A stretch of 64,000 nucleotides of DNA from contig NW_005434662.1 in assembly GCF_000315625.1 (NCBI RefSeq), positions 643,479 to 707,478 on the forward strand, in the 5' to 3' direction. Positions 42,125-63,210 of this stretch are shown one piece after another. Every line of letters starts with the position of its first letter. Position 1 is the stretch's first letter. The position numbers and the translations under genes were made by a program. A model generated the notes under the pieces. It had not been told where the DNA came from. It ran no database searches and saw only the letters and a list, made by a program, of their open reading frames with translations. This DNA is from Guillardia theta CCMP2712. Taxonomy: Eukaryota > Protista > Cryptophyta.

Positions 42125-45100
42125 ACCACCTCTTGAGCTCACTTGTCTTTTATGCAGAAGGAAGAAACGAACGAGAAAGATCGCCCGACGACGAGCACAA
42201 GGAACCAGCAGATGCTGCATGCGGCCCTCAAGGAGCGGTGACATGCCGCGACACTAGCTGGTTATGAGCCTCACTCCTACCTCAAGGTTCCGCCCGCAGG
42301 TCATTCCGGGCTACTCCAGCGCAGCCCCGGGCGGGCGGGAGCAGCCAACGGGTGCGGAGGATCCTCCCCAGAGCTACAAGAGCGTCGCAGCGGCGAGTCA
42401 TGAGACCCTGGCTGAGATCAAGGCCAAGAGGTCTGCTGCTGCCCAGCTGAAGCAGGAGAAGGTCTTGTCGTGCTTGAGGAGGAGGCTGCCTTGTGATGGG
42501 GCTGCAGTTCAAGCAGGAGCATCTCAAGTCGCAGGCCGGGATTCAGCATCACATCAAGTCGGCAGTGAGAGCGCATGAGGTCCAGCGATGATGCTATCCG
42601 CTGCGAACCCTGACGACAGCCCAGGACGAGCTCAAGGATGCAGTCCAGGAGGCGCGGAGCAAGGCGGAGCTGCAGGAAGCGAGGGTGATTCTTAAGGAAA
42701 GGTGAAACAAACCGAACCTTCAGAGGATGTTGCTCTGTCGCTGACGTGTGAGCAGCGCGAGACCAGCTCCTCCGTCTATCAAACTGGACACAAAGTTCGT
42801 GGAAGACATGAAGAAGCTGGAGGAGGAGAAGCTGGAGCTTGAGAGAAGGGAACAGGTGTCTTGTACTTTCATTCTCCTTGATCGTGGGCTCACCCAGCAT
42901 TCTCAGTTGCAAGAGGCTTACATTGAGCAGCTCAAGTTCGAACAGCAGCAGAAGTTGGAAAGGGAGGAGGCGAAGAGGAAAACGCTGCAGAAACTTCGCA
43001 ATGAGAACCAGATCATCGACAAGATGCTGCGCGAGACAGACAGCTTGGATGGAAGGCTGATGAAGGAAGTTGGGACGTTGGAGACCCTGAAGGAGCAGTT
43101 CAAGAAGAAGCAAGAGCTGGCGGACAAGCTGCGAGATCAGCAGGAGGAGCTGAAGAAGAAGCAGGAGGAGAGGGAGAGGGAGCTTTCCACGCTGAAGCAC
43201 GAAGTGAGCAAGGCAACTAACTCCGCGGGCATCCAGCTCCTGCAGATGGAGAGGTTGAAGCAGATCCAAGAGGAAAGCAGGAGGCTGCAGGAGGAGAAGC
43301 AGCAAGAGCTGCAGCGGCTGAAAGAGGAGATCCAGATGAAGTCGAGCATCGATGCCGAGGCCCAGGAGCTGGAGCGGCTGAGGGAAGAGAAGAAGAGGAT
43401 TGAAGAGAGTCAGGCGGAGGCCCGCAAGGCGTTGGAGCAGGAGCAGGAGATGCTGGAGAAAGCGATGTCAGAGCAGAAAACCATCGCTGAGGAGTTTGAG
43501 AAGCTGCAGCGGGAGAAGAGGAGACGCGAGGAGCACGAGATGGAACTCCGGCGCTCCATGGTGCAGGAGGAGCGAGAGATCGAGCGGTTGAAGGAGGAAG
43601 CCGAGAACCGGAGGATGGAGATAGAGAGGCTGCACGAGGAGAAGCAGAACCACATGAAGGTGCTGGAGGGGCAGCAAAAGGACCAGCTGATGAGCGAGCT
43701 GGCGGAGCTGAAGGAGAGGAAAGAGAAGGTCATGAACGAGGAGGCTCGGCTGAGGAGCGAAAAGCGGGAGCTGGAGGAGCTGAACAAGAGGAGGGAGGCT
43801 GAGCTAAGACACATCGAAGAGCTTCGGATCAAGAGCGACGAGCTCGAGAGACAGCAGATGCAAGCCAAGCTTGAGGAGGAGCGGGCGCTACGGGAGAAGG
43901 AGGAGAGGGAGAGGGAGCGGCTCCGCGCCAAGGAAGATCGGATCCGAAAGATGCTGGAGATGGAAGCTGAGAAAGCGAAGCTGGACATGGAGCTGGAGAG
44001 GAAGAGGAGGCAGGCTGAGATAGACAAGCTGAAGCAGGAGATACAGGACAAGAAGATCACCGAGGAAGAAGAAGCAGCAGAGGAAGAAGTTGATGCCAAT
44101 GAGCAGAAGATCAACGACTGGCTGAAGAGCTCGCAAACAGGTGGTCCTGCTGGAGGAGGAGGAGGAGGAGGAGGAGGAGGAGGAGGAGGAGGAGGAGGGA
44201 GAGCAGGAGACATTACCGAGAGGTCGATGGGCAACTCGTCGGCGGGAGACGGCGGCATGACGGACAGGAGTGACGCAACCGACGGGACGATGACGAGCCG
44301 AGGACCTGCGTCGCAGTTCAAGCTTGCAAGGTACGGGAAGGTGAAGGAGCTGGAGAAGGTGATCACAAGGGACAACGTGGACGATCGAGACGACAAGGGC
44401 AACACCTGCCTGCATCATGCGTGCATGCAGAATAAGAAACGGTAAACCTTCTCCCTCCTCTTCTCCTCTTCATCTTCCTTTCTCCCCCTCCCCCCCCCCC
44501 CCCAAAAAAAAAAACACACTCCCTCTTCCGGGTTATTTTGATGATGTGTCATCGGGTGCTCGATTCAAAAAGCCCTGGATCGGGGCGCGTCGGGGGGGGC
44601 CCNNNNNNNNNNNNNNNNNNNNNNNNNNNNNNNNNNNNNNNNNNNNNNNNNNNNNNNNNNNNNNNNNNNNNNNNNNNNNNNNNNNNNNNNNNNNNNNNNN
44701 NNACTACTACTACTACTCTCTCTCTCTCTCTCTCTCTCTCCTCCCCCCCCCCCCCCCCCCCCCCGACCCGAGGTTCCTCCCTCTCCCTCTCCCTCTCCCT
44801 TGAATCTCATCGTCTGCCTATGCAGAATTGCGAAGATGGTGCTGCGACTGGGCGCAGACATCAACGCGCAGAACGAAAAGGTGAGGCACAGAGGAGACGG
44901 CGGTTGACGTCGAGCTGAATGGACAGCAGGGCAACACGTGCCTGCACTACTGCTTCGGATACAACTACACAGAGCTGGGAGAGTACCTCATCTCCAAAGG
45001 AGCGGATGAGAGCATTAGGAATCATCTCAACGCCACCTGCCGTAAGCTGCTGCTCCCCCTCCCCGTGACGCTCCTCCATGTGATTGTGTGGCAGGCGAAG

Positions 45101-55700: not shown

Positions 55701-56873
55701 AGAGGGGAGGTCAACGAAATAGTTTCGTAATGCAAAATTGAAGCATTTTCCCATTGTCGAGGCTCGTGATGCTTTGCATGTGCTTCCTTGAGATGATTGA
55801 AGATGGTTGCTCTCTGGTTTTGGTTCATAAATGTGGAAACAAAATCATGAACAATGTAAACCGATCCAATGTTGGAAATTCACATTTAGCAGACAATCCC
55901 AACAAAATCATGAGCGAGAAATACAAACAAGGTACAATACGCAAGAGAATGAAAGGAATTGTCAGTCATAGATATAGATTTCGAGATCATAAGGGTTTGA
56001 GCGTTGTGCAGCTTCATGATTCCAGTCTATTCACACTGACATTCGGTCTGAATTCGTTGTGTCAGGAATTTACAAGCAGAAAAACTGTATAAAAAGTCCA
56101 TTTGTCGTTGTGTAATAAGCCTACACTCAACTATCTCTGACTTGGACAGGTTCAACAGAGTGTAAAACATCGGTTCAGGTGGGGATTAGTGCACTTGAAT
56201 GATCTTTCATCGCATTCAGAATGTAGAGAAGAAAATGCAGTACGAATCGACAATGATTACCGATGACAAAAAGAACTGTTGAATCAGTTTGATGAACTTC
56301 GACATGCTTGCAATATATTCATAATATGAAAATGCAATCGAATGAAGTGTTCAACACACTCAACATGCTTCCATTGCCATCTTTGGGTTTAGGGTTCATG
56401 AGTTTGGCGAGGCGACCAAATCACATTTTCATATTACAACATGATGAATAACTCATGATGTTACAACTTTCTCGTGAGTCATATACTTTTAGAATGATCT
56501 TGGTTGTGATTCAAGTGCAAGAAACATGTTAAAATATCAAGCTACATCCTCATCATCAGCTTTCCTGCGACTACCGCGCGCCATTGTTCGGCAGTAAATA
56601 GACCCCCACCACATCTCCAAATACCCCTACCCTATACTTTGACTGCTTTGTGCTTTGAAGCAACCGGGACAAATCAAAAAGCGATGGACCCCTACCCTAT
56701 TAATTTCCCTAACCCTAAGAAAACTTGCCGAAAATCAAGAAAACGGCAAAAATCAAGGTCTGCAATTTGTGTCCCCGAAAGATTAAAAGCCTCGGCGGGC
56801 CTGTCGGAAGAAGGACTGCCGCAGTCACCGCCGGCCGCGACTGCCGCAGTGCTGGGGCCGACGCCGGGGCCGC

Positions 56874-56963
56874 GGGCGGGAGCCGAAGCGCGGCGACTCG
56901 ATGAAGTCGAGGCAAGAGCACCAGGAGATCCTCCGGCACGACGGGGTCCAAGGGCGAGTCCGG
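56874..56963 (-). pseudogene. Relic fragment of the RWP-RK gene A/C N-terminal coding region, internally deleted
   Basis: 56874-56896 matches 59152-59174; 56914-56963 matches 59316-59365 with 2 mismatches (PDSPLDPVVPEDLLVL). Confidence 0.85.
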
Positions 56964-57039
56964 CATGACTTTCGCCAACTTGCAATTTGCTGCTCCGGGC
57001 CTGCGCGGTTGGGGTTGAGGCTCATGACTCAGTGAAATA

Positions 57040-57603
57040 CTGGTCGCGATTTTTGACGGTCATTTCCAGCCCACGTGCCGACAGGGGGAGGAGGGGGGGG
57101 CTAACTGGAACTTGACGCTCCAGGACAGGCAGACGTTTGCCGGGAAGGCGAGGCTGCACGGGGTGAAGTATCAGGCTTGCGTCTTCCCCAATGGGATGTG
57201 CTGCGTGTGGGGGCCTTGGAGGGGTCTGAACACGATGCAACAACGTTTTCACGGTCTGGCGTTCTTGACACTTTGCGGGAGGTGTCAGCGGAGGAGGGGA
57301 TGGACTTCTGCGGCTTTGGGGATCCTTCACCGCTTCATGCAGCGCATCTTGAAGGCTCCAGGAGAAGGGGAGCTCACGCGCCTGCAGAGGAGGTACAACG
57401 CCCTCAGATTAACGCCCTCATGGGGCGTTAATCTGCGTTTGGGGAGCCAGCGGGTTGGGAAGCTCTTTCCTCTGGCGAAGTTCCACTTCAACCTCCACAC
57501 TCTGCTTTACGGGAACCAGACAACTGTATACTTCGAAGGGGAGCAGATGTTGTTGGGTGTGTCTGTGGAGGATCATATCTCGTTGGCAGATGAGTTTCAA
57601 TAA
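57040..57603 (+). pseudogene. PIF/Harbinger (DDE_Tnp_4/HARBI1-like) transposase remnant, 5'-truncated and frameshifted
   Basis: LVAIFDGHFQPTCRQG (first D at 57055), FAGKARLHGVKYQACVFPNG..WGPWRG, frameshift, SEHDATTF..FCGFGD, frameshift, ..RYNAL.., then NLHTLLYGNQTTVYF. The segment carrying the catalytic E is absent. Confidence 0.8.
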
Positions 57604-57621: not shown

Positions 57622-58518
57622 CTAGTCGTCCTCCAGCAGCTTCATCAGACCACGTGGGAGGTACACACCCTTCTCCTGGGCAGCCACAAAGGCGTTGATC
57701 GCAGCGGCTACCTCCTTGGTGCGAGCAGCTTGCGCATTCATCTTGGCTGCACGGGCCATCAGGATTTGTGCCTTCCAAAACTGCTCAAGAACTGCTATGT
57801 CATTTGCCAGTGAGGACTCCAGCACATTGCACAGGCGGTCTTGCTGACCGAGCACCAACGCAACACGGTCGCTGGACAGGCTGCGGCTGTTGTGGTTGGG
57901 CCCTTTCCTGTTGGGATGGAGAGCTGGATCCTGCTTGGCGCGCTTCTGCAGACCGCCTGAGGTGCCACGCCCATAGCTGCCTCCCTCTTCCTCCAACCAC
58001 TCCTCAGCCTGTGCAGCGTTGTTATAACCACGGCGTTTAGCTGTGGTCTCCATAGCCTCCAGCAGCCTCTTCCTCGCGTTCTTCTGCATCCCCTCAGCAT
58101 CTCTCTTCTCCCACTCCTTCCTGTCTTTCATCGCCCTCATCCTCCCGGCCAGATCGAGAATGAGCTTGTGCATCTCTGAGAGTTCCCCGTCACCATTCTG
58201 CCACAGCCTCACCCACTTTTCCTCCCCTCCGTTAGCGATTTCCTCAGCTCGTTTCTCAATCTTGCGCCATTTGTCCTTCAAGGTGTTCAACATGAGCTGC
58301 CCTGCAAACATAGGATGCCCGTTGAGCATCTCCTGAACCTGCTTCATCGTCTTCTCCTTCTTCACCTCGTCAAATATGGCTCCATCGTGGAATTGCATGA
58401 CGCATTGTAAGATGATCTCCAGCTTGCGTTGTTCCCCATCCCCCTGAGGTCCTTCAACGTCTGTTCCAACTCGTGGTGGAGCGCCGATGGGGTCTTCAGC
58501 CTCCACAGGTTGCTCCAT
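57622..58518 (-). CDS. Myb/SANT-like (trihelix) DNA-binding protein, Harbinger partner ORF, 298 aa
   Basis: Intronless intact ORF, tail-to-tail with the transposase (18-bp gap). KLEIILQCV..TMKQVQEMLN..LNTLKDKWRKIEKR followed by a charged coiled coil, as in Harbinger second ORFs. Confidence 0.65.
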   Translation of the reverse strand: MEQPVEAEDPIGAPPRVGTDVEGPQGDGEQRKLEIILQCVMQFHDGAIFDEVKKEKTMKQVQEMLNGHPMFAGQLMLNTLKDKWRKIEKRAEEIANGGEEKWVRLWQNGDGELSEMHKLILDLAGRMRAMKDRKEWEKRDAEGMQKNARKRLLEAMETTAKRRGYNNAAQAEEWLEEEGGSYGRGTSGGLQKRAKQDPALHPNRKGPNHNSRSLSSDRVALVLGQQDRLCNVLESSLANDIAVLEQFWKAQILMARAAKMNAQAARTKEVAAAINAFVAAQEKGVYLPRGLMKLLEDD

Positions 58519-58840
58519 GGTAGCTGCGCGCGCGATTGGTGGGGAAAGGGCGAGGGCAGAATTTGAATAATAATAATACCTACAATTGCAATTCACAATA
58601 TAAGAAAAGGCGTGTTCGGTACGCCAATTAGAGGTGGCAACCTGTGATGTGCAAATGTACTGTAAACTCTGCGAGCAAGCTTGCCCCGGGTTGCCTGTCC
58701 TTGAGCTCCACAAGCTCCATCACACCCTCAGCAGCAACAACGTGCCAGCCCTTCATGTTCCACACACTGACGGCGATGATGCTTCATTCAGCTCAAAACA
58801 TGCTTCATTCAATCTTCTCAAGCAGCAAAGGGCCTCTAAG

Positions 58841-59515
58841 TTACAAGTACATGTCTACTCCGCTCCCCTCCGTGTCCGTTGACGACTCTGCCTGGCTGGC
58901 TTGCAGCTGCACGCGTCCCTCCATTCTCCGCCCAGCCTTCTTTCCCTTGGCCCGACCAAACTTGTACGGCCACTTGTCTACTCCCAGCTGCCTGCACACA
59001 AGCTTCATCGTCGACTTGCCGATGCCGATCTTGGCCGCGGCGACCTCGAGGCTCTCGTGGAAGTGGTCGGCGAGGAGCTCGAGGGTGATCTCGACGGGCT
59101 TGTCGGACTGGAAGAAGGACTGTCGCGACTGCACCCGCACCACCGGCGGGCGGGCGGGAGCCGAAGCGCGGCGATGAGGCCGAGGCTTGCCTTGCTCGGG
59201 AGAGCAGAGGCTGAAGCTGTCGTGGGGGTGCTGGAGAGTCTCCTCTGGCATCGCGACGCTACGCTGGCAAGCCATCAGCGACGCTGGCTCGAGCCACGCG
59301 TCCTGGCTCTCCTCGAAGAGCACCAAGAGATCTTCCGGCACGACGGGGTCCAAGGGCGAGTCCGGGAGGGAGGCCGACGAGTCGACCTCGGGGAGCGGGA
59401 GGCAAAAGAAGGCGTCTGAGCAGCTAGGTGACTGATCCATGAGGTGGTCTGCAAAGCAGTCATCGAGCATGGCCTGGAGCTCCAAGGACGAGGGGGTCAA
59501 GTGTAGCCACTGCAT
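58841..59515 (-). CDS. RWP-RK domain transcription factor, copy A (224 aa, intronless)
   Basis: ITLELLADHFHESLEVAAAKIGIGKSTMKLVCRQLGVDKWPYK matches the RWP-RK consensus (L...F..P...AA..LG...T.LK..CR..G..RWP.RK). Confidence 0.9.
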   Translation of the reverse strand: MQWLHLTPSSLELQAMLDDCFADHLMDQSPSCSDAFFCLPLPEVDSSASLPDSPLDPVVPEDLLVLFEESQDAWLEPASLMACQRSVAMPEETLQHPHDSFSLCSPEQGKPRPHRRASAPARPPVVRVQSRQSFFQSDKPVEITLELLADHFHESLEVAAAKIGIGKSTMKLVCRQLGVDKWPYKFGRAKGKKAGRRMEGRVQLQASQAESSTDTEGSGVDMYL

Positions 59516-60080
59516 TGTCTGGAAGGGAGGAAAGCAGGGATCGAGAAAGCGAGGAGGGGGTAGGGACTAGGGGGAGAGGGCTGGGGTGTGCAGGAGGACA
59601 GGTATGGACAGCCAGGAAGGAGCGAGCAGACGGCGGAAGCAGGTAGGCCGTGGCAGGGGGAGCTGGGTGTTTTGTGCCGGCTTGGGCAAGGGTTGATATG
59701 GAGGAGGGGAGCAGGAGCAAAGGGAAGGAGTAGATTACTACAGGAGCCGATCCCTACGAAACGATGCGACCTGGAATGTCCTGGCCCCAAGCGCTGCACT
59801 CTGATGTGCAATGCGCCGGCGCGTTTGTCCGAGCGGGTAGTAAAGGACCCCGATGGAAGCTTCGAGAGCTCGAGGGGGCCGTGGACGGGACGGACGTGTG
59901 CATGCCAGACCGAATACTGACATGGCAGTCTTTTCAAGGCTCAACGATTGGATAGCCGTTGTGCACAGATCCTCTCAAAACGCTGTCCTTTCAGCCTGCT
60001 ACTCTTTACTACGCCCTAGTCTCCATCCTTCTCTCCCTGAGAGGCATCTGGCAGCAAACAACAGCGGCAGGACAGATCGA

Positions 60081-60653
60081 ATGGCTCTCTTCGAGATGTG
60101 TGCAGACGACTGCTACGACCTGATCCTCTCACATCCCTTCCGCCTCCCACTACCTCAAGCCGAGGACCCCGCGTCCGCCCCTGAGAGCTCCACAAGCTTG
60201 CAAGTAGAGGAGGACTCGGCCCTTTCTCAGGATGCTTGGACCCTCGAGTGCTCGGATGTTGAGGGTTTGGGTCCTGCCAGCCTCCCTGGAGACGCAGCGC
60301 TACACGCGACTGGCTGCTACTGCAAGACCCTCAGTCCCTCCCCCGCCGCCGTGCACTCCGAGCTGGATCCTGACCCTCTCAGTGCTCGCGACCGGCGGTC
60401 TTGTCCGCGGTCAAAGATGTGCCCGCCGGTGGTGCGGGTGCAGTCGCGGCAGTCCTTCTTCCAGTCCGACAAGCCCGTCGAGATCACCCTCGAGCTCCTC
60501 GCCGACCACTTCCACGAAAGCCTCGAGGTCGCCGCGGCCAAGATCGGCATCGGCAAGTCGACGATGAAGCTTGTGTGCAGGCAGCTGGGAGTAGACAAGT
60601 GGCCGTACAAGTTTGGACGGGCCAAGCGCAAAGTGAGGCCAAGCGCAAAGTGA
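60081..60653 (+). CDS. RWP-RK domain transcription factor, gene B (190 aa, intronless; C-tail shortened by a 17-bp duplication)
   Basis: Same RWP-RK domain sequence as copy A, with a divergent N-terminus from ATG 60081 (MALFEMCADDC..). The upstream in-frame ATG at 59853 lies within the duplicated promoter block. Confidence 0.88.
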   Translation: MALFEMCADDCYDLILSHPFRLPLPQAEDPASAPESSTSLQVEEDSALSQDAWTLECSDVEGLGPASLPGDAALHATGCYCKTLSPSPAAVHSELDPDPLSARDRRSCPRSKMCPPVVRVQSRQSFFQSDKPVEITLELLADHFHESLEVAAAKIGIGKSTMKLVCRQLGVDKWPYKFGRAKRKVRPSAK

Positions 60654-61152
60654 GGCCAAGCCTTGACGAGGCATCATCGGCGCGCGACTCGAGGAGATCT
60701 CTATCGGGCGAGAGCGTGCAAGGCCGTATGAAAGAATGTAAATAAATGAGCTGTGCAACTAGAGAGTCTTTGGTCGCTTCGCCGGTGCCTTCCATCGCAC
60801 TCAAGGCTCCTACCGCACGCATGCATACCATGGTAGAGATGAAGCCTGCAGGGCCTCAAGAGCCAAACCCCTCACCAGGCCCATGCTCGTGGCACCCTTC
60901 CACTCAACGCCGCCATGACCTTTCTGTCAACTCTGCGAGCAAGCTTGCCCCGGGCCGGGCCGCCTCCTTTGTAGCCAAACAGCTGTCTAGCCGCCAACAA
61001 TCTCGCCTGTCCTTGAGCTCCACCAGCTCCATCACACCCTCAGCAGCATCAAGGTGCCAGCCCTTTCCGTTCCACACACTGACGGCGATGATGCTTCATT
61101 CAGCTCAAAACATGCTTCATTCAATCTTCTCAAGCAGCAAAGGGCCTCTAAG

Positions 61153-61827
61153 TTACAAGTACATGTCTACTCCGCTCCCCTCCGTGTCCGTTGACGACTC
61201 TGCCTGGCTGGCTCGCAGCTGCACGCGTCCCTCCATTCTCCGCCCAGCCTTCTTTCCCTTGGCCCGACCAAACTTGTACGGCCACTTGTCTACTCCCAGC
61301 TGCCTGCACACAAGCTTCATCGTCGACTTGCCGATGCCGATCTTGGCCGCGGCGACCTCGAGGCTCTCGTGGAAGTGGTCGGCGAGGAGCTCGAGGGTGA
61401 TCTCGACGGGCTTGTCGGACTGGAAGAAGGACTGCCGCGACTGCATCCGCACTACGGGCGGGCGGGCGGGAGCCGAAGCGCGGCGATGAGGCCGAGGCTT
61501 GCCTTGCTCGGGAGAGCAGAGGCTGAAGCTGTCGTGGGGGTGCTGGAGAGTCTCCTCTGGCATCGCGACGCTACGCTGGCAAGCCATCAGCGACGCTGGC
61601 TCGAGCCACGCGTCCTGGCTCTCCTCGAAGAGCACCAAGAGATCTTCCGGCACGACGGGGTCCAAGGGCGAGTCCGGGAGGGAGGCCGACGAGTCGACCT
61701 CGGGGAGCGGGAGGCAAAAGAAGGCGTCTGAGCAGCTAGGTGACTGATCCATGAGATGGTCTGCAAAGCAGTCATCGAGCATGGCCTGGAGCTCCAAGGA
61801 CGAGGGGGTCAAGTGTAGCCACTGCAT
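61153..61827 (-). CDS. RWP-RK domain transcription factor, copy C (224 aa)
   Basis: Differs from copy A at only two residues (RVQ/RMQ and LQAS/LRAS). Confidence 0.9.
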   Translation of the reverse strand: MQWLHLTPSSLELQAMLDDCFADHLMDQSPSCSDAFFCLPLPEVDSSASLPDSPLDPVVPEDLLVLFEESQDAWLEPASLMACQRSVAMPEETLQHPHDSFSLCSPEQGKPRPHRRASAPARPPVVRMQSRQSFFQSDKPVEITLELLADHFHESLEVAAAKIGIGKSTMKLVCRQLGVDKWPYKFGRAKGKKAGRRMEGRVQLRASQAESSTDTEGSGVDMYL

Positions 61828-63210
61828 TGTCTGGAAGGGAGGAAAGCAGGGATCGAGAAAGCGAGGAGGGGGTAGGGACTAGGGGGAGAGGGCTGGGGTG
61901 TGCAGGAGGACAGGTATGGACAGCCAGGAAGGAGCGAGCAGACGGCGGAAGCAGGTAGGCCGTGGCAGGGGGAGCTGGGTGTTTTATTCCGGCTTGGGCA
62001 AGGGTTGATATGGAGGAGGGGAGCAGGAGCAAAGGGAAGGAGTAGATTACTACAGGAGCCGATCCCTACGAAAGGAATGTCCTGGCCCCAAGCGCTGCAC
62101 TCTGATGTGCAATGCGCCGGCGCGTTTGTCCGAGCGGGTAGTAAAGGACCGTGATGGAAGCGTCGAGAGCTCGAGGGGGCCGTGGACGGGACGGGCGTGC
62201 CACGGTGTGCATGACTGGCAGGGTCCGTCGTTCCGGTGAGGCCCGGGGATGCTAGTCAAAAGTAGCAGCCTCACGGTCGGCCGGGGCCCGGTCCTCCGGG
62301 GTTTTATAGTCCCGCTAAGGTTCTACTCAAGCCTGCCTCAGATCAGAAAATTTCGGGGAAGTTGGGGATGAGGGCTTTGTCGATCGAAGGCGCGTGCGAT
62401 GGAGCCAAGTAAGAAGTGAAAGCTATGGTGTTGCTGTTGATCTCTTGCAATTTGTTATGAGGAAGCAATGTTTGCGTATGATTTTACCATTATTTCCTGC
62501 TCATCCTGTGATTCTTGATCTTTCATGTTTGGTTGCCTCATGTAAATGTGGCTCTAATTTTTCATTTTGGCATAATCTTATCCCGTCCTCGACCTCATTG
62601 TCTCCACATATGATCCCTGAGTTTGGCTATGATGAAGCAAATACAATCAAAGTTCTTCCCATGCAAAGGGCCGTTGTGCCGATGCTGAGAAAACCATTGT
62701 CATCTTTGCTCTGAGCCGTAGTTTCCCTTTTTCTGGATGTTGCGCTTCAAATCTTTCTGTTTCTCATGTATGATTTTCTACAGGTTGCTTCCATGCATGG
62801 ACCGGATAAGTTGATTTCTTCTTTATGGCTGAATGATGATTTTCAAGAATGCCACCACTCATCATGCGGATAAGCCAGGTCAACAGTGGCTGTAGTGAGC
62901 AATTCACCGTGTCATTTAAAGTAAATCAACGTGTACATATCGATCGATCCTTCCACAAGTGTGTTCCACAAGAAAATGTGTCACACATCAAAGCCGACAA
63001 CGAATGTGTAATGTACATGGTTGTGTGATGCGTGTGTTGTGTTTCATGGTCGAGTTGCCTCCGGGCTTTCATAAAGCGATGATATTCTCACACACGGCGA
63101 CAGATGCTGCATGCGGATCGCAAGCAAATCCACACAATCGTTGTCAATCTCAATCGACATCCTGATCAATAGTTTGTTGACTCTAGCCCTTTCATTCTAC
63201 CCCGATATAT

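What the first reader, a model, noticed from the sequence alone, without database searches (positions are those of the whole stretch)
58841..61827. Three alternating RWP-RK genes whose DNA-binding cassettes form homogenised inverted repeats: candidate invertible or gene-conversion regulatory locus
Seen: genes run A(-), B(+), C(-). A 206-bp block encoding the RWP-RK domain occurs at 58946-59151, at 60421-60626 (inverted) and at 61258-61463. A and B differ at only 3 synonymous sites in this block, B and C at 5. Outside it, B and A share only motif remnants (DDC, FxLPLP, SQDAW, PASL), so they look like old paralogues. Near-identity at synonymous sites, with sharp borders, is hard to explain by protein selection and points to recent conversion or recombination. 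At one site C carries B's base rather than A's. Known: RWP-RK factors control mating type and gametogenesis (Chlamydomonas MID, plant RKD) and nitrate responses (NIT2/NLP); inverted-repeat flip/flop switching exists at yeast MAT loci (Ogataea, Komagataella). Inference: a crossover between the cassettes would invert either the N-termini plus the shared 565-bp divergent promoter (A-B) or the tails and 3' ends (B-C). That would reshuffle N-terminal regions and tails around a constant DNA-binding domain, possibly as a life-cycle or mating switch.
Basis: partly seen in the sequence, partly recalled or inferred. Interest (0 to 1): 0.85.

Follow-up and report, generated by a model that had tools for sequence, protein, structure and literature searches.

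The report
Gene-converted DNA-binding cassette in RWP-RK cluster
In the alga Guillardia theta, three neighbouring small transcription-factor genes share an almost identical 211-base DNA-binding segment because it was recently copied from one gene into an old, diverged neighbour; other clusters of this gene family show the same pattern, and nothing shows that the segment flips.

Summary
Arms of 211 nt at 58941-59151, 60421-60631 (inverted) and 61253-61463 are 97-98% identical.

First, A and C are a 1.2-kb direct duplication of a whole gene with its flanks (97.6% identical). Only B is an old paralogue. Second, the window is Guillardia theta CCMP2712 (JH992976.1), which has at least 20 small RWP-RK genes in several clusters.

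A and B have dS 0.065 in the block. Their N-termini are saturated (pS 0.74). Block dS is 0.23-0.37 against unlinked paralogues and 1.6 against paralogue Gt101978, which encodes nearly the same peptide. Cassettes group by locus, while the N-termini do not put B with A and C.

The same cassette-only identity occurs in a same-strand pair (L003) and in another divergent pair (L005), so the inverted layout is not special.

Best reading: ectopic gene conversion from the A lineage into B, after the A/C duplication, as part of family-wide concerted evolution of the DNA-binding cassette.

Inversion could not be tested, because short-read contigs break at the cassette. No recombinant N-terminus/tail protein is in the database.

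First readers of this scan flagged the same pattern on other pieces of this genome (s1-434715, s1-431788, s1-436909).

The parts
58841..59515 (-). Gene A: intron-less 224-aa RWP-RK protein. It has a variable N-terminus, the cassette, and a 39-aa tail that ends in an acidic Ser/Thr-rich motif.
   Evidence: ORF. Pfam PF02042 2.6e-13. Annotated gene in GCA_000315625.1 JH992976.1. Contigs of run X17 (guessed RNA) cover 58772-59528 but not the intergenic DNA.
60081..60653 (+). Gene B: 190-aa RWP-RK protein. It is an old paralogue with its own N-terminus and a short basic tail, and is the acceptor of the converted cassette.
   Evidence: ORF. Pfam 1.6e-13. N-terminal pS against A is 0.74. The N-terminus has no relative in the protein collection. 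It is held by 13 runs guessed to be RNA, from 6 studies.
61153..61827 (-). Gene C: near-copy of A (2 amino-acid differences), part of the 1.2-kb direct duplication.
   Evidence: Its right-hand junction is collinear in the related metagenome contig L001.
58941..59151 (-). Cassette copy in A (PPVV...FGRAK, the RWP-RK domain); the likely donor.
60421..60631 (+). Cassette copy in B: 3 mismatches in 206 against A and 5 in 206 against C.
61253..61463 (-). Cassette copy in C.
58660..59915 (.). Direct-repeat unit 1: A with its 3' flank and about 380 bp of upstream DNA.
   Evidence: blastn 58693-59898 against 61005-62199, 97.6%. Difference map with 48-, 11- and 8-bp indels.
60924..62225 (.). Direct-repeat unit 2: C with the same flanks.
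59516..60080 (.). The 565-bp divergent A-B intergenic region. It is not covered by the X17 contigs, which is consistent with a shared promoter region.
60620..60661 (+). A 17-bp tandem duplication (2.5 copies) that starts in the last 7 nt of the shared block. It shifts the frame, and B's stop codon lies in the second unit.
   Evidence: TRF. Sequence. Present without change in contigs of runs X1 and X2 (records 6 and 23).
56795..56966 (-). Degenerate, truncated relic of a fourth A-type copy: part of the N-terminus plus the first ~40 nt of the cassette.
   Evidence: blastn and tblastn fragments. Sequence.

Best explanation
This is one cluster of a tandemly expanding family of small, intron-less RWP-RK transcription-factor genes in the nuclear genome of the cryptophyte Guillardia theta. 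Shown: A and C come from a recent 1.2-1.3 kb segmental duplication. B is an ancient paralogue lying between them on the other strand. Inferred: after that duplication, a non-reciprocal ectopic gene conversion (repair of a break in B using the A copy as template) overwrote about 211 nt of B, its DNA-binding domain and a few flanking codons, with A-lineage sequence. The same process recurs across the family. Cassettes are nearly identical within each cluster, moderately similar between clusters and scaffolds, and fully diverged only in a few outlying paralogues. Strong protein-level constraint probably keeps the cassette similar enough to remain a conversion substrate, while the unconstrained N-termini and tails drift apart. 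The outcome is a set of factors with one DNA-binding specificity and different N-terminal and C-terminal parts. The inverted orientation is incidental. It makes inversion by crossover possible, but nothing shows that it happens.
For: Tract against flanks: A-B block dS 0.065 (3 synonymous, 0 non-synonymous differences in 68 codons) against N-terminal pS 0.74 and dN 0.95 over 101 aligned codons. P = 4e-18 against the unconverted baseline. No nucleotide-level constraint: between the orthologues A and L001, block dS (0.088) matches N-terminal dS (0.077) and tail dS (0.14). Gt101978 encodes 90% the same peptide with 35-37 of 180 nt different and dS 1.6. Identity extends into the PPVV and FGRAK codons, which vary across the family. 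Direction and timing: PPVV and FGRAK are native to the A lineage (compare APVV and FNRKG in Gt101978), so B is the acceptor. At 59144 and 59141 A equals B while C and the outgroup L001 differ, so the donor was A after the A/C split. Family-wide pattern: in the 138-nt core, differences are 0-3 within clusters, 6-18 between homogenised clusters and 22-39 to outliers. The cassette tree makes all five clusters monophyletic (0 of 200 shuffles as low). The N-terminal tree rejects the clade A+C+L001+B (p-AU 0.032) and places A with Gt101978 and Hanusia. Orientation does not matter: the same-strand L003 pair shares only 179 bp at 97.8%, and the divergent L005 pair only 197 bp. GC3 is 0.91 in the A and B cassettes, against 0.81 and 0.68 in their N-termini and 0.66 in the Gt101978 cassette, as GC-biased conversion predicts. 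The arrangement is real: contigs of independent runs cover all four junctions outside the cassettes (records 17, 18, 22, 23, 24).
Against: Conversion is inferred from sequence pattern, not observed. The topological discordance is only modestly significant (p-AU 0.03-0.04), because the cassette is short and the N-termini align poorly. The timing rests on two neighbouring sites. A single complex rearrangement that made the A/C duplication and rewrote B in one event would leave the same pattern. A cross-species test of concerted evolution was not possible, because no B orthologue was found. The GC3 contrast rests on few genes: Gt104240 and Gt104241 have GC3 0.87 although they are outliers.
Confidence: 0.75

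Rival explanations
1. The 211-nt inverted repeats are the working parts of a reversible inversion (flip/flop) that swaps N-termini with promoters against tails and 3' ends, as a life-cycle or mating switch.
For: The substrate exists: 98% and 97% identical inverted arms 1269 and 621 nt apart. RWP-RK factors govern mating and gametogenesis in other lineages (established knowledge, and the introduction of the Rhodomonas preprint). The metagenome contig L002 combines the N-terminus of one G. theta paralogue with the tail of its neighbour, joined in the cassette. That would be a crossover product if the contig is not a mis-assembly.
Against: No joint or second orientation appears in any run laid, though the contigs cannot span the cassette. 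No recombinant N_A+tail_B or N_B+tail_A protein exists in the collection. The same homogenisation occurs in a same-strand pair. An inversion would only exchange tails, not switch expression. A keeps the ancestral pairing of N-terminus and acidic tail seen in Gt101978 and Hanusia. L002 comes from a k=127 assembly, and in this window the cassettes match exactly over 93 nt (A-B) to 138 nt (A-C) of the core, so a mis-join is plausible.
Confidence: 0.07
2. There was no conversion. The cassette is held constant at the nucleotide level by selection, such as codon bias, an RNA structure or a small-RNA target.
For: A 65-nt core occurs with at most 1-2 changes in 13 of the G. theta copies fetched (A, B, C, the L003 pair, seven in L007; 3 changes in one L005 copy). 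Its unitig has about 13 times single-copy depth. A/C and L001 have no difference in the 138-nt core.
Against: Between orthologues the whole-block dS (0.088) is no lower than in the N-terminus (0.077). Gt101978, Gt113549 and Gt104240/1 encode the same domain with 17-28% nucleotide differences. Synonymous variants are cluster-specific. A-B identity covers codons that are not conserved in the family.
Confidence: 0.06
3. It was a one-off chimeric origin. The rearrangement that duplicated the A unit also replaced B's domain, for example by template switching during break repair, and there is no continuing exchange.
For: A-B block divergence (1.4%) roughly equals A-C divergence (1.5-2.4%). A 17-bp tandem duplication sits exactly on the 3' border of the tract, like a repair scar. 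Four of the six A-C coding differences cluster in 22 bp at the 5' border.
Against: It does not explain the same pattern at L003 and L005, or the graded between-cluster identity. It differs from the best explanation in tempo, not in kind.
Confidence: 0.1
4. It is an assembly artefact: collapsed or mis-joined repeats in the 2012 scaffold.
For: The window holds a 100-N gap (44603-44702), so the assembly is scaffolded. No short-read contig spans a cassette.
Against: Contigs from runs of other years and samples reproduce all four unique junctions and the 17-bp duplication without differences. Both the A-type and the C-type variants are present in reads (table 3). L001 from a related organism runs through N-terminus, cassette, tail and flank in the same order.
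Confidence: 0.02

Closest known systems
Segment-restricted concerted evolution by ectopic gene conversion in clustered gene families (textbook cases recalled from my own knowledge: Drosophila hsp70 copies, primate gamma-globin genes)
   Same: A tract of near-identity with sharp borders lies inside paralogues whose flanks have diverged. Synonymous sites are homogenised. Copies group by location rather than by gene type. GC3 is raised in the tract.
   Different: Here the tract is just the roughly 180-211 nt DNA-binding domain of a transcription-factor family with at least 20 members. Exchange reaches across clusters and scaffolds in a graded way. The host is a cryptophyte. I found no paper that reports it.
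Arm-to-arm gene conversion in inverted repeats or palindromes (human Y-chromosome ampliconic palindromes; own knowledge)
   Same: Inverted copies a short distance apart are kept near-identical by non-reciprocal exchange. Inversion by crossover is a possible by-product.
   Different: The arms are only 211 nt long and lie inside otherwise different genes. The same homogenisation is seen between same-strand copies.
Flip/flop mating-type switching by inverted-repeat recombination in Ogataea polymorpha and Komagataella phaffii
   Same: Inverted repeats flank a segment that carries regulatory genes.
   Different: In the yeasts, inversion moves one MAT locus next to a silencing region, and both orientations are observed. 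Here no second orientation is seen, no silencing landmark is known, and inversion would only swap C-terminal tails.
Minimal RWP-RK factors: Chlamydomonas MID, plant RKD
   Same: They are short proteins whose only recognisable domain is a C-terminal RWP-RK domain.
   Different: The name-giving motif reads KWPYK here, not RWPxRK. Orthology to MID or RKD was not tested. Copy number is at least 20. No link to sex is known in Guillardia.

Membership tests
RWP-RK transcription factors (Pfam PF02042) | Domain match above the curated gathering score | tested here: met
   A and C score 50.1 bits and B 50.7 bits, against a cut-off of 29.3.
RWP-RK transcription factors (Pfam PF02042) | Literal RWPxRK signature motif | tested here: not met
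   All members of this Guillardia/Hanusia subfamily read KWPYK followed by F, H, C or Q. This is a conservative variant, and the profile match still covers it (profile positions 2-44 of 49).
RKD/MID-like minimal RWP-RK subfamily | Short protein with no PB1, GAF or other domain | tested here: met
   The proteins are 190-224 aa and PF02042 is the only Pfam hit.
RKD/MID-like minimal RWP-RK subfamily | Phylogenetic placement with MID or RKD, and a role in gamete or mating identity | not tested
   No tree with green-lineage sequences was built. There are no functional data.
Concerted evolution by ectopic gene conversion | Tract dS far below flank dS, with sharp borders | tested here: met
   dS 0.065 in the tract against pS 0.74 in the flank. 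No blastn match exists outside 206-211 nt.
Concerted evolution by ectopic gene conversion | Tree of the tract disagrees with the tree of the flanks; copies group by locus | tested here: met
   All five clusters are monophyletic for the cassette. The N-terminal data reject A+C+L001+B at p-AU 0.032. Significance is modest.
Concerted evolution by ectopic gene conversion | Paralogues within a species are closer than orthologues between species | tested here: inconclusive
   Only A-type (L001) and Gt99385-type (L002) relatives were found, and no B orthologue.
Programmed inverted-repeat inversion switch | Inverted repeats flanking the segment | tested here: met
   Arms of 211 nt, 97-98% identical.
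Programmed inverted-repeat inversion switch | Both orientations present in reads, strains or transcripts | tested here: inconclusive
   No joints appear in 4 runs, but no contig bridges a cassette. No recombinant protein is in the collection.
Programmed inverted-repeat inversion switch | Inversion changes which gene is expressed | not testable with these tools
   Geometry predicts only an exchange of tails and 3' ends, since promoters move with their N-termini (inference).

The most novel reading that the evidence does not exclude
The cassette repeats could be more than passive conversion substrates. Crossovers between them, inversions in inverted pairs such as A-B and B-C and unequal exchange in same-strand pairs such as L003, would recombine N-terminal modules and C-terminal tails around a constant DNA-binding domain. 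That would generate or switch between RWP-RK isoforms in a cryptophyte whose sexual cycle is still undescribed. The chimeric L002 gene would then be a natural product of such an exchange.
Probability: 0.07. Interest if true: 0.8.

Novelty: new member of a known kind. Interest (0 to 1): 0.4.

Why it matters
The locus shows that a large cryptophyte transcription-factor family keeps one DNA-binding module uniform by DNA-level exchange while the rest of each protein diverges.

This matters in three ways:
- Trees built from the RWP-RK domain will mislead about orthology in this family.
- The at least 20 paralogues probably recognise the same cis-element and differ in their partners or regulation.
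- The inverted and direct cassette repeats are built-in substrates for rearrangement at loci that, in other lineages, control mating and gametogenesis.

The mechanism itself is well known.

Tried and rejected
1. Testing orientation with public reads. The four runs laid gave no joints, but every Logan contig ends at a cassette, and the one raw RNA run has 60-nt reads. Those reads fall mostly on the cassette, many with bases that differ from the window's, and a loose end reads into the tail of paralogue Gt149839. The result is uninformative, not negative.

2. Searching for a B orthologue. Only B itself was found with its N-terminus, so the cross-species test of concerted evolution failed.

3. 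My first guess that the ORFs left of A (57112-57603, 57622-58530) were a Harbinger-type transposon. There is no Pfam hit at E <= 0.1 and short-read depth is single-copy, so I dropped it.

4. L002 as proof of crossover at the cassette. The contig is chimeric relative to G. theta, but a k=127 assembly across a near-exact repeat could produce this, so I kept it only as a lead.

5. Nucleotide-level selection. Rejected because block dS between orthologues is normal and the outlier paralogues recode the same peptide.

6. Literature. No paper combines RWP-RK with Guillardia or cryptophytes and gene conversion. One preprint only notes 56 RWP-RK genes in Rhodomonas salina.
Full report
**Where the window comes from.** Protein A is encoded at 701319-703993 (reversed) of scaffold JH992976.1 (1,086,841 bp) in GCA_000315625.1, Guillardia theta CCMP2712. 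All named relatives are G. theta or Hanusia phi proteins. The window is therefore cryptophyte nuclear DNA.

**Checking the observation.**
- The repeat finder reports inverted arms at 58941-59151 and 60421-60631 (211 nt, 98%) and at 60421-60631 and 61253-61463 (211 nt, 97%).
- blastn gives 3 mismatches in 206 for A-B and 5 in 206 for B-C.
- The ORFs are A 58841-59515 (-), B 60081-60653 (+) and C 61153-61827 (-). Each passes Pfam RWP-RK at 50 bits.
- The A-B spacer is 565 bp.

- A and C are not independent paralogues. They lie in a 1206-bp direct repeat (58693-59898 and 61005-62199, 97.6% identical), preceded by a further 31-bp match. The repeat covers the whole gene, its 3' flank and about 380 bp upstream.
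- One of the five B-C differences changes an amino acid (V127M in C).

**Is the arrangement real?** Contigs from runs of other years and samples cover the left-flank/A junction, the A-unit/B junction, the B/C-unit junction and the C-unit/right-flank junction without differences (records 17, 18, 22, 23, 24). Both A-type and C-type variants are present in reads (table 3). A related organism's contig, L001 (about 94% identical), is collinear through C and its right flank. No contig bridges a cassette, so the link between each N-terminus and its tail rests on the original assembly and on L001.

**A against B.**
- In a codon alignment the 68 block codons carry 3 synonymous and 0 non-synonymous differences (dS 0.065).
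- The 101 aligned N-terminal codons give pS 0.74 and dN 0.95. Most conserved residues there use different codons.
- blastn finds no similarity outside the block.
- With the synonymous difference rate seen between A and paralogue Gt101978 (0.66), three or fewer differences in 48 synonymous sites has P = 4e-18.

**The family context changes the picture.** I fetched the G. theta paralogues with their DNA.
- The genome holds at least 20 small RWP-RK genes, mostly in clusters:
  - a same-strand pair (L003);
  - a divergent pair (L005);
  - a seven-gene cluster with a 1528-bp tandem array (L007);
  - a pair with an intron inside the domain (L008);
  - two single genes (L004 and L009).
- Differences in the 138-nt core:

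| Comparison | Differences in 138 nt |
|---|---|
| Within a cluster | 0-3 |
| Between the homogenised clusters, including A/B/C against another scaffold | 6-18 |
| To Gt101978, Gt113549 and Gt104240/1 | 22-39 |

- Block dS for A is 0.23-0.37 against unlinked paralogues and 1.6 against Gt101978.
- A 65-nt core occurs with at most 1-2 changes in 13 of the copies fetched, and with 3 in one L005 copy. This matches a unitig at about 13 times single-copy depth.
- Local homogenisation is therefore real, but it is the top of a family-wide gradient.

**Conversion or selection?** The evidence favours conversion.
- Between the orthologues A and L001, block dS (0.088) equals N-terminal dS (0.077). Synonymous sites in the cassette are therefore not unusually constrained.
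- Gt101978 has the N-terminus and acidic tail most like A's. It encodes 90% the same domain with 35-37 of 180 nt different.
- A-B identity runs into the PPVV and FGRAK codons, which vary across the family.
- The cassette tree makes every cluster monophyletic (0 of 200 label shuffles as low).
- The N-terminal tree rejects A+C+L001+B (p-AU 0.032) and places A with Gt101978 and Hanusia. The cassette data in turn reject A+C+L001+Gt101978 (p-AU 0.039).
- GC3 is 0.91 in the A and B cassettes, against 0.81 and 0.68 in their N-termini and 0.66 in the Gt101978 cassette. GC-biased conversion would produce this contrast.

**Direction and timing (inferred).** PPVV and FGRAK are native to the A lineage; Gt101978 has APVV and FNRKG. 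B is therefore the acceptor. At 59144 and 59141 A equals B while C and the outgroup L001 differ. This suggests that A donated after the A/C duplication. Four of the six A-C coding differences lie within 22 bp at the 5' border of the block. A 17-bp tandem duplication (60620-60661) starts in the last 7 nt of the block. It shifts B's frame, so that B ends after a 13-aa basic tail. It may be a repair scar.

**The inversion hypothesis.** The substrate exists, but the evidence does not favour a switch.
- Cassette-only identity also occurs in the same-strand L003 pair (179 bp, 97.8%).
- No recombinant N_A+tail_B or N_B+tail_A protein is in the collection.
- A keeps the ancestral combination of N-terminus and tail.
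- An inversion would move each promoter together with its N-terminus, so only the tails and 3' ends would be exchanged.
- The read test was uninformative.
- The one hint of exchange at a cassette is L002. Its 5' half matches Gt99385 and its 3' half matches the neighbouring Gt149839. A k=127 metagenome assembly could mis-join there.

**Expression.** Contigs of run X17 (guessed RNA) cover A (58772-59528) and B (60052-60468) but not the intergenic DNA. B's unique N-terminus is held by 13 runs guessed to be RNA, from 6 studies. The RNA label of these runs is a guess, so transcription of both genes is probable rather than proven.

**Novelty.** I found no paper on this. First readers of this scan flagged the same phenomenon on other pieces of this genome. 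I tested equivalent cases myself on L003 and L005. The mechanism is a known kind, so this is a new member of it. It is of moderate interest because it concerns a regulator family tied to mating in other lineages.

Noticed in passing
window 56795-56966 (-): A degenerate relic of a fourth A-type RWP-RK copy. It keeps part of the N-terminus (LPDSPLDPVVPEDLLVL) and the first ~40 nt of the cassette, then breaks off. The cluster was once larger or has been rearranged.
   Followed up: partly
window 60620-60661: A perfect 17-bp tandem duplication (2.5 copies) sits exactly on the 3' border of the converted tract. It frameshifts B and replaces a potential ~35-aa tail with a 13-aa basic one. It is present in independent runs.
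   Followed up: partly
L007 1934-11297 (JH992966.1, about 280-293 kb): Seven RWP-RK genes lie together. Five are 238-aa copies in a 1528-bp tandem array, each followed by a small opposite-strand ORF, and their cassettes are identical or differ by 1 nt.
   Followed up: partly
L008 4485-4720 and 6355-6590: The two RWP-RK genes on JH992980.1 carry a 59-nt intron inside the domain. All homogenised cassettes lack it, so the homogenised subfamily may descend from an intron-less ancestor.
   Followed up: no
L002 1-1118 against L003 10322-12749: The metagenome gene P0007 joins the upstream region and N-terminus of Gt99385 to the tail and 3' flank of the neighbouring Gt149839, with the junction in the cassette. 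It is either a natural crossover product or a k=127 mis-assembly.
   Followed up: partly
proteins A, C, P0003, P0004, P0006, P0007: Some family members share a conserved C-terminal end motif: an acidic Ser/Thr-rich stretch, then Gly-Ser, ending in hydrophobic-Tyr/Phe-Leu. An N-terminal F/R-x-(L/V/I)-P-(L/I)-P motif is also conserved. Both may be docking or activation motifs. B and other short-tailed members lack the C-terminal motif.
   Followed up: no
window 60415-60696 in run X22: RNA reads piling on B's cassette mostly carry bases that differ from the window's (for example T>G at 60572 in 347 of 363 reads). A loose end reads into the tail of Gt149839, so the reads seem to come largely from paralogues, Gt149839 among them. 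Cassette depth cannot be used as an expression measure for A, B or C.
   Followed up: partly
window 57622-58530 (-) and 57112-57603 (+): Two long ORFs lie between the relic and A, with no Pfam match. The first is an annotated 298-aa gene. Short-read depth is single-copy.
   Followed up: partly
window 44603-44702: A 100-N scaffold gap.
   Followed up: no
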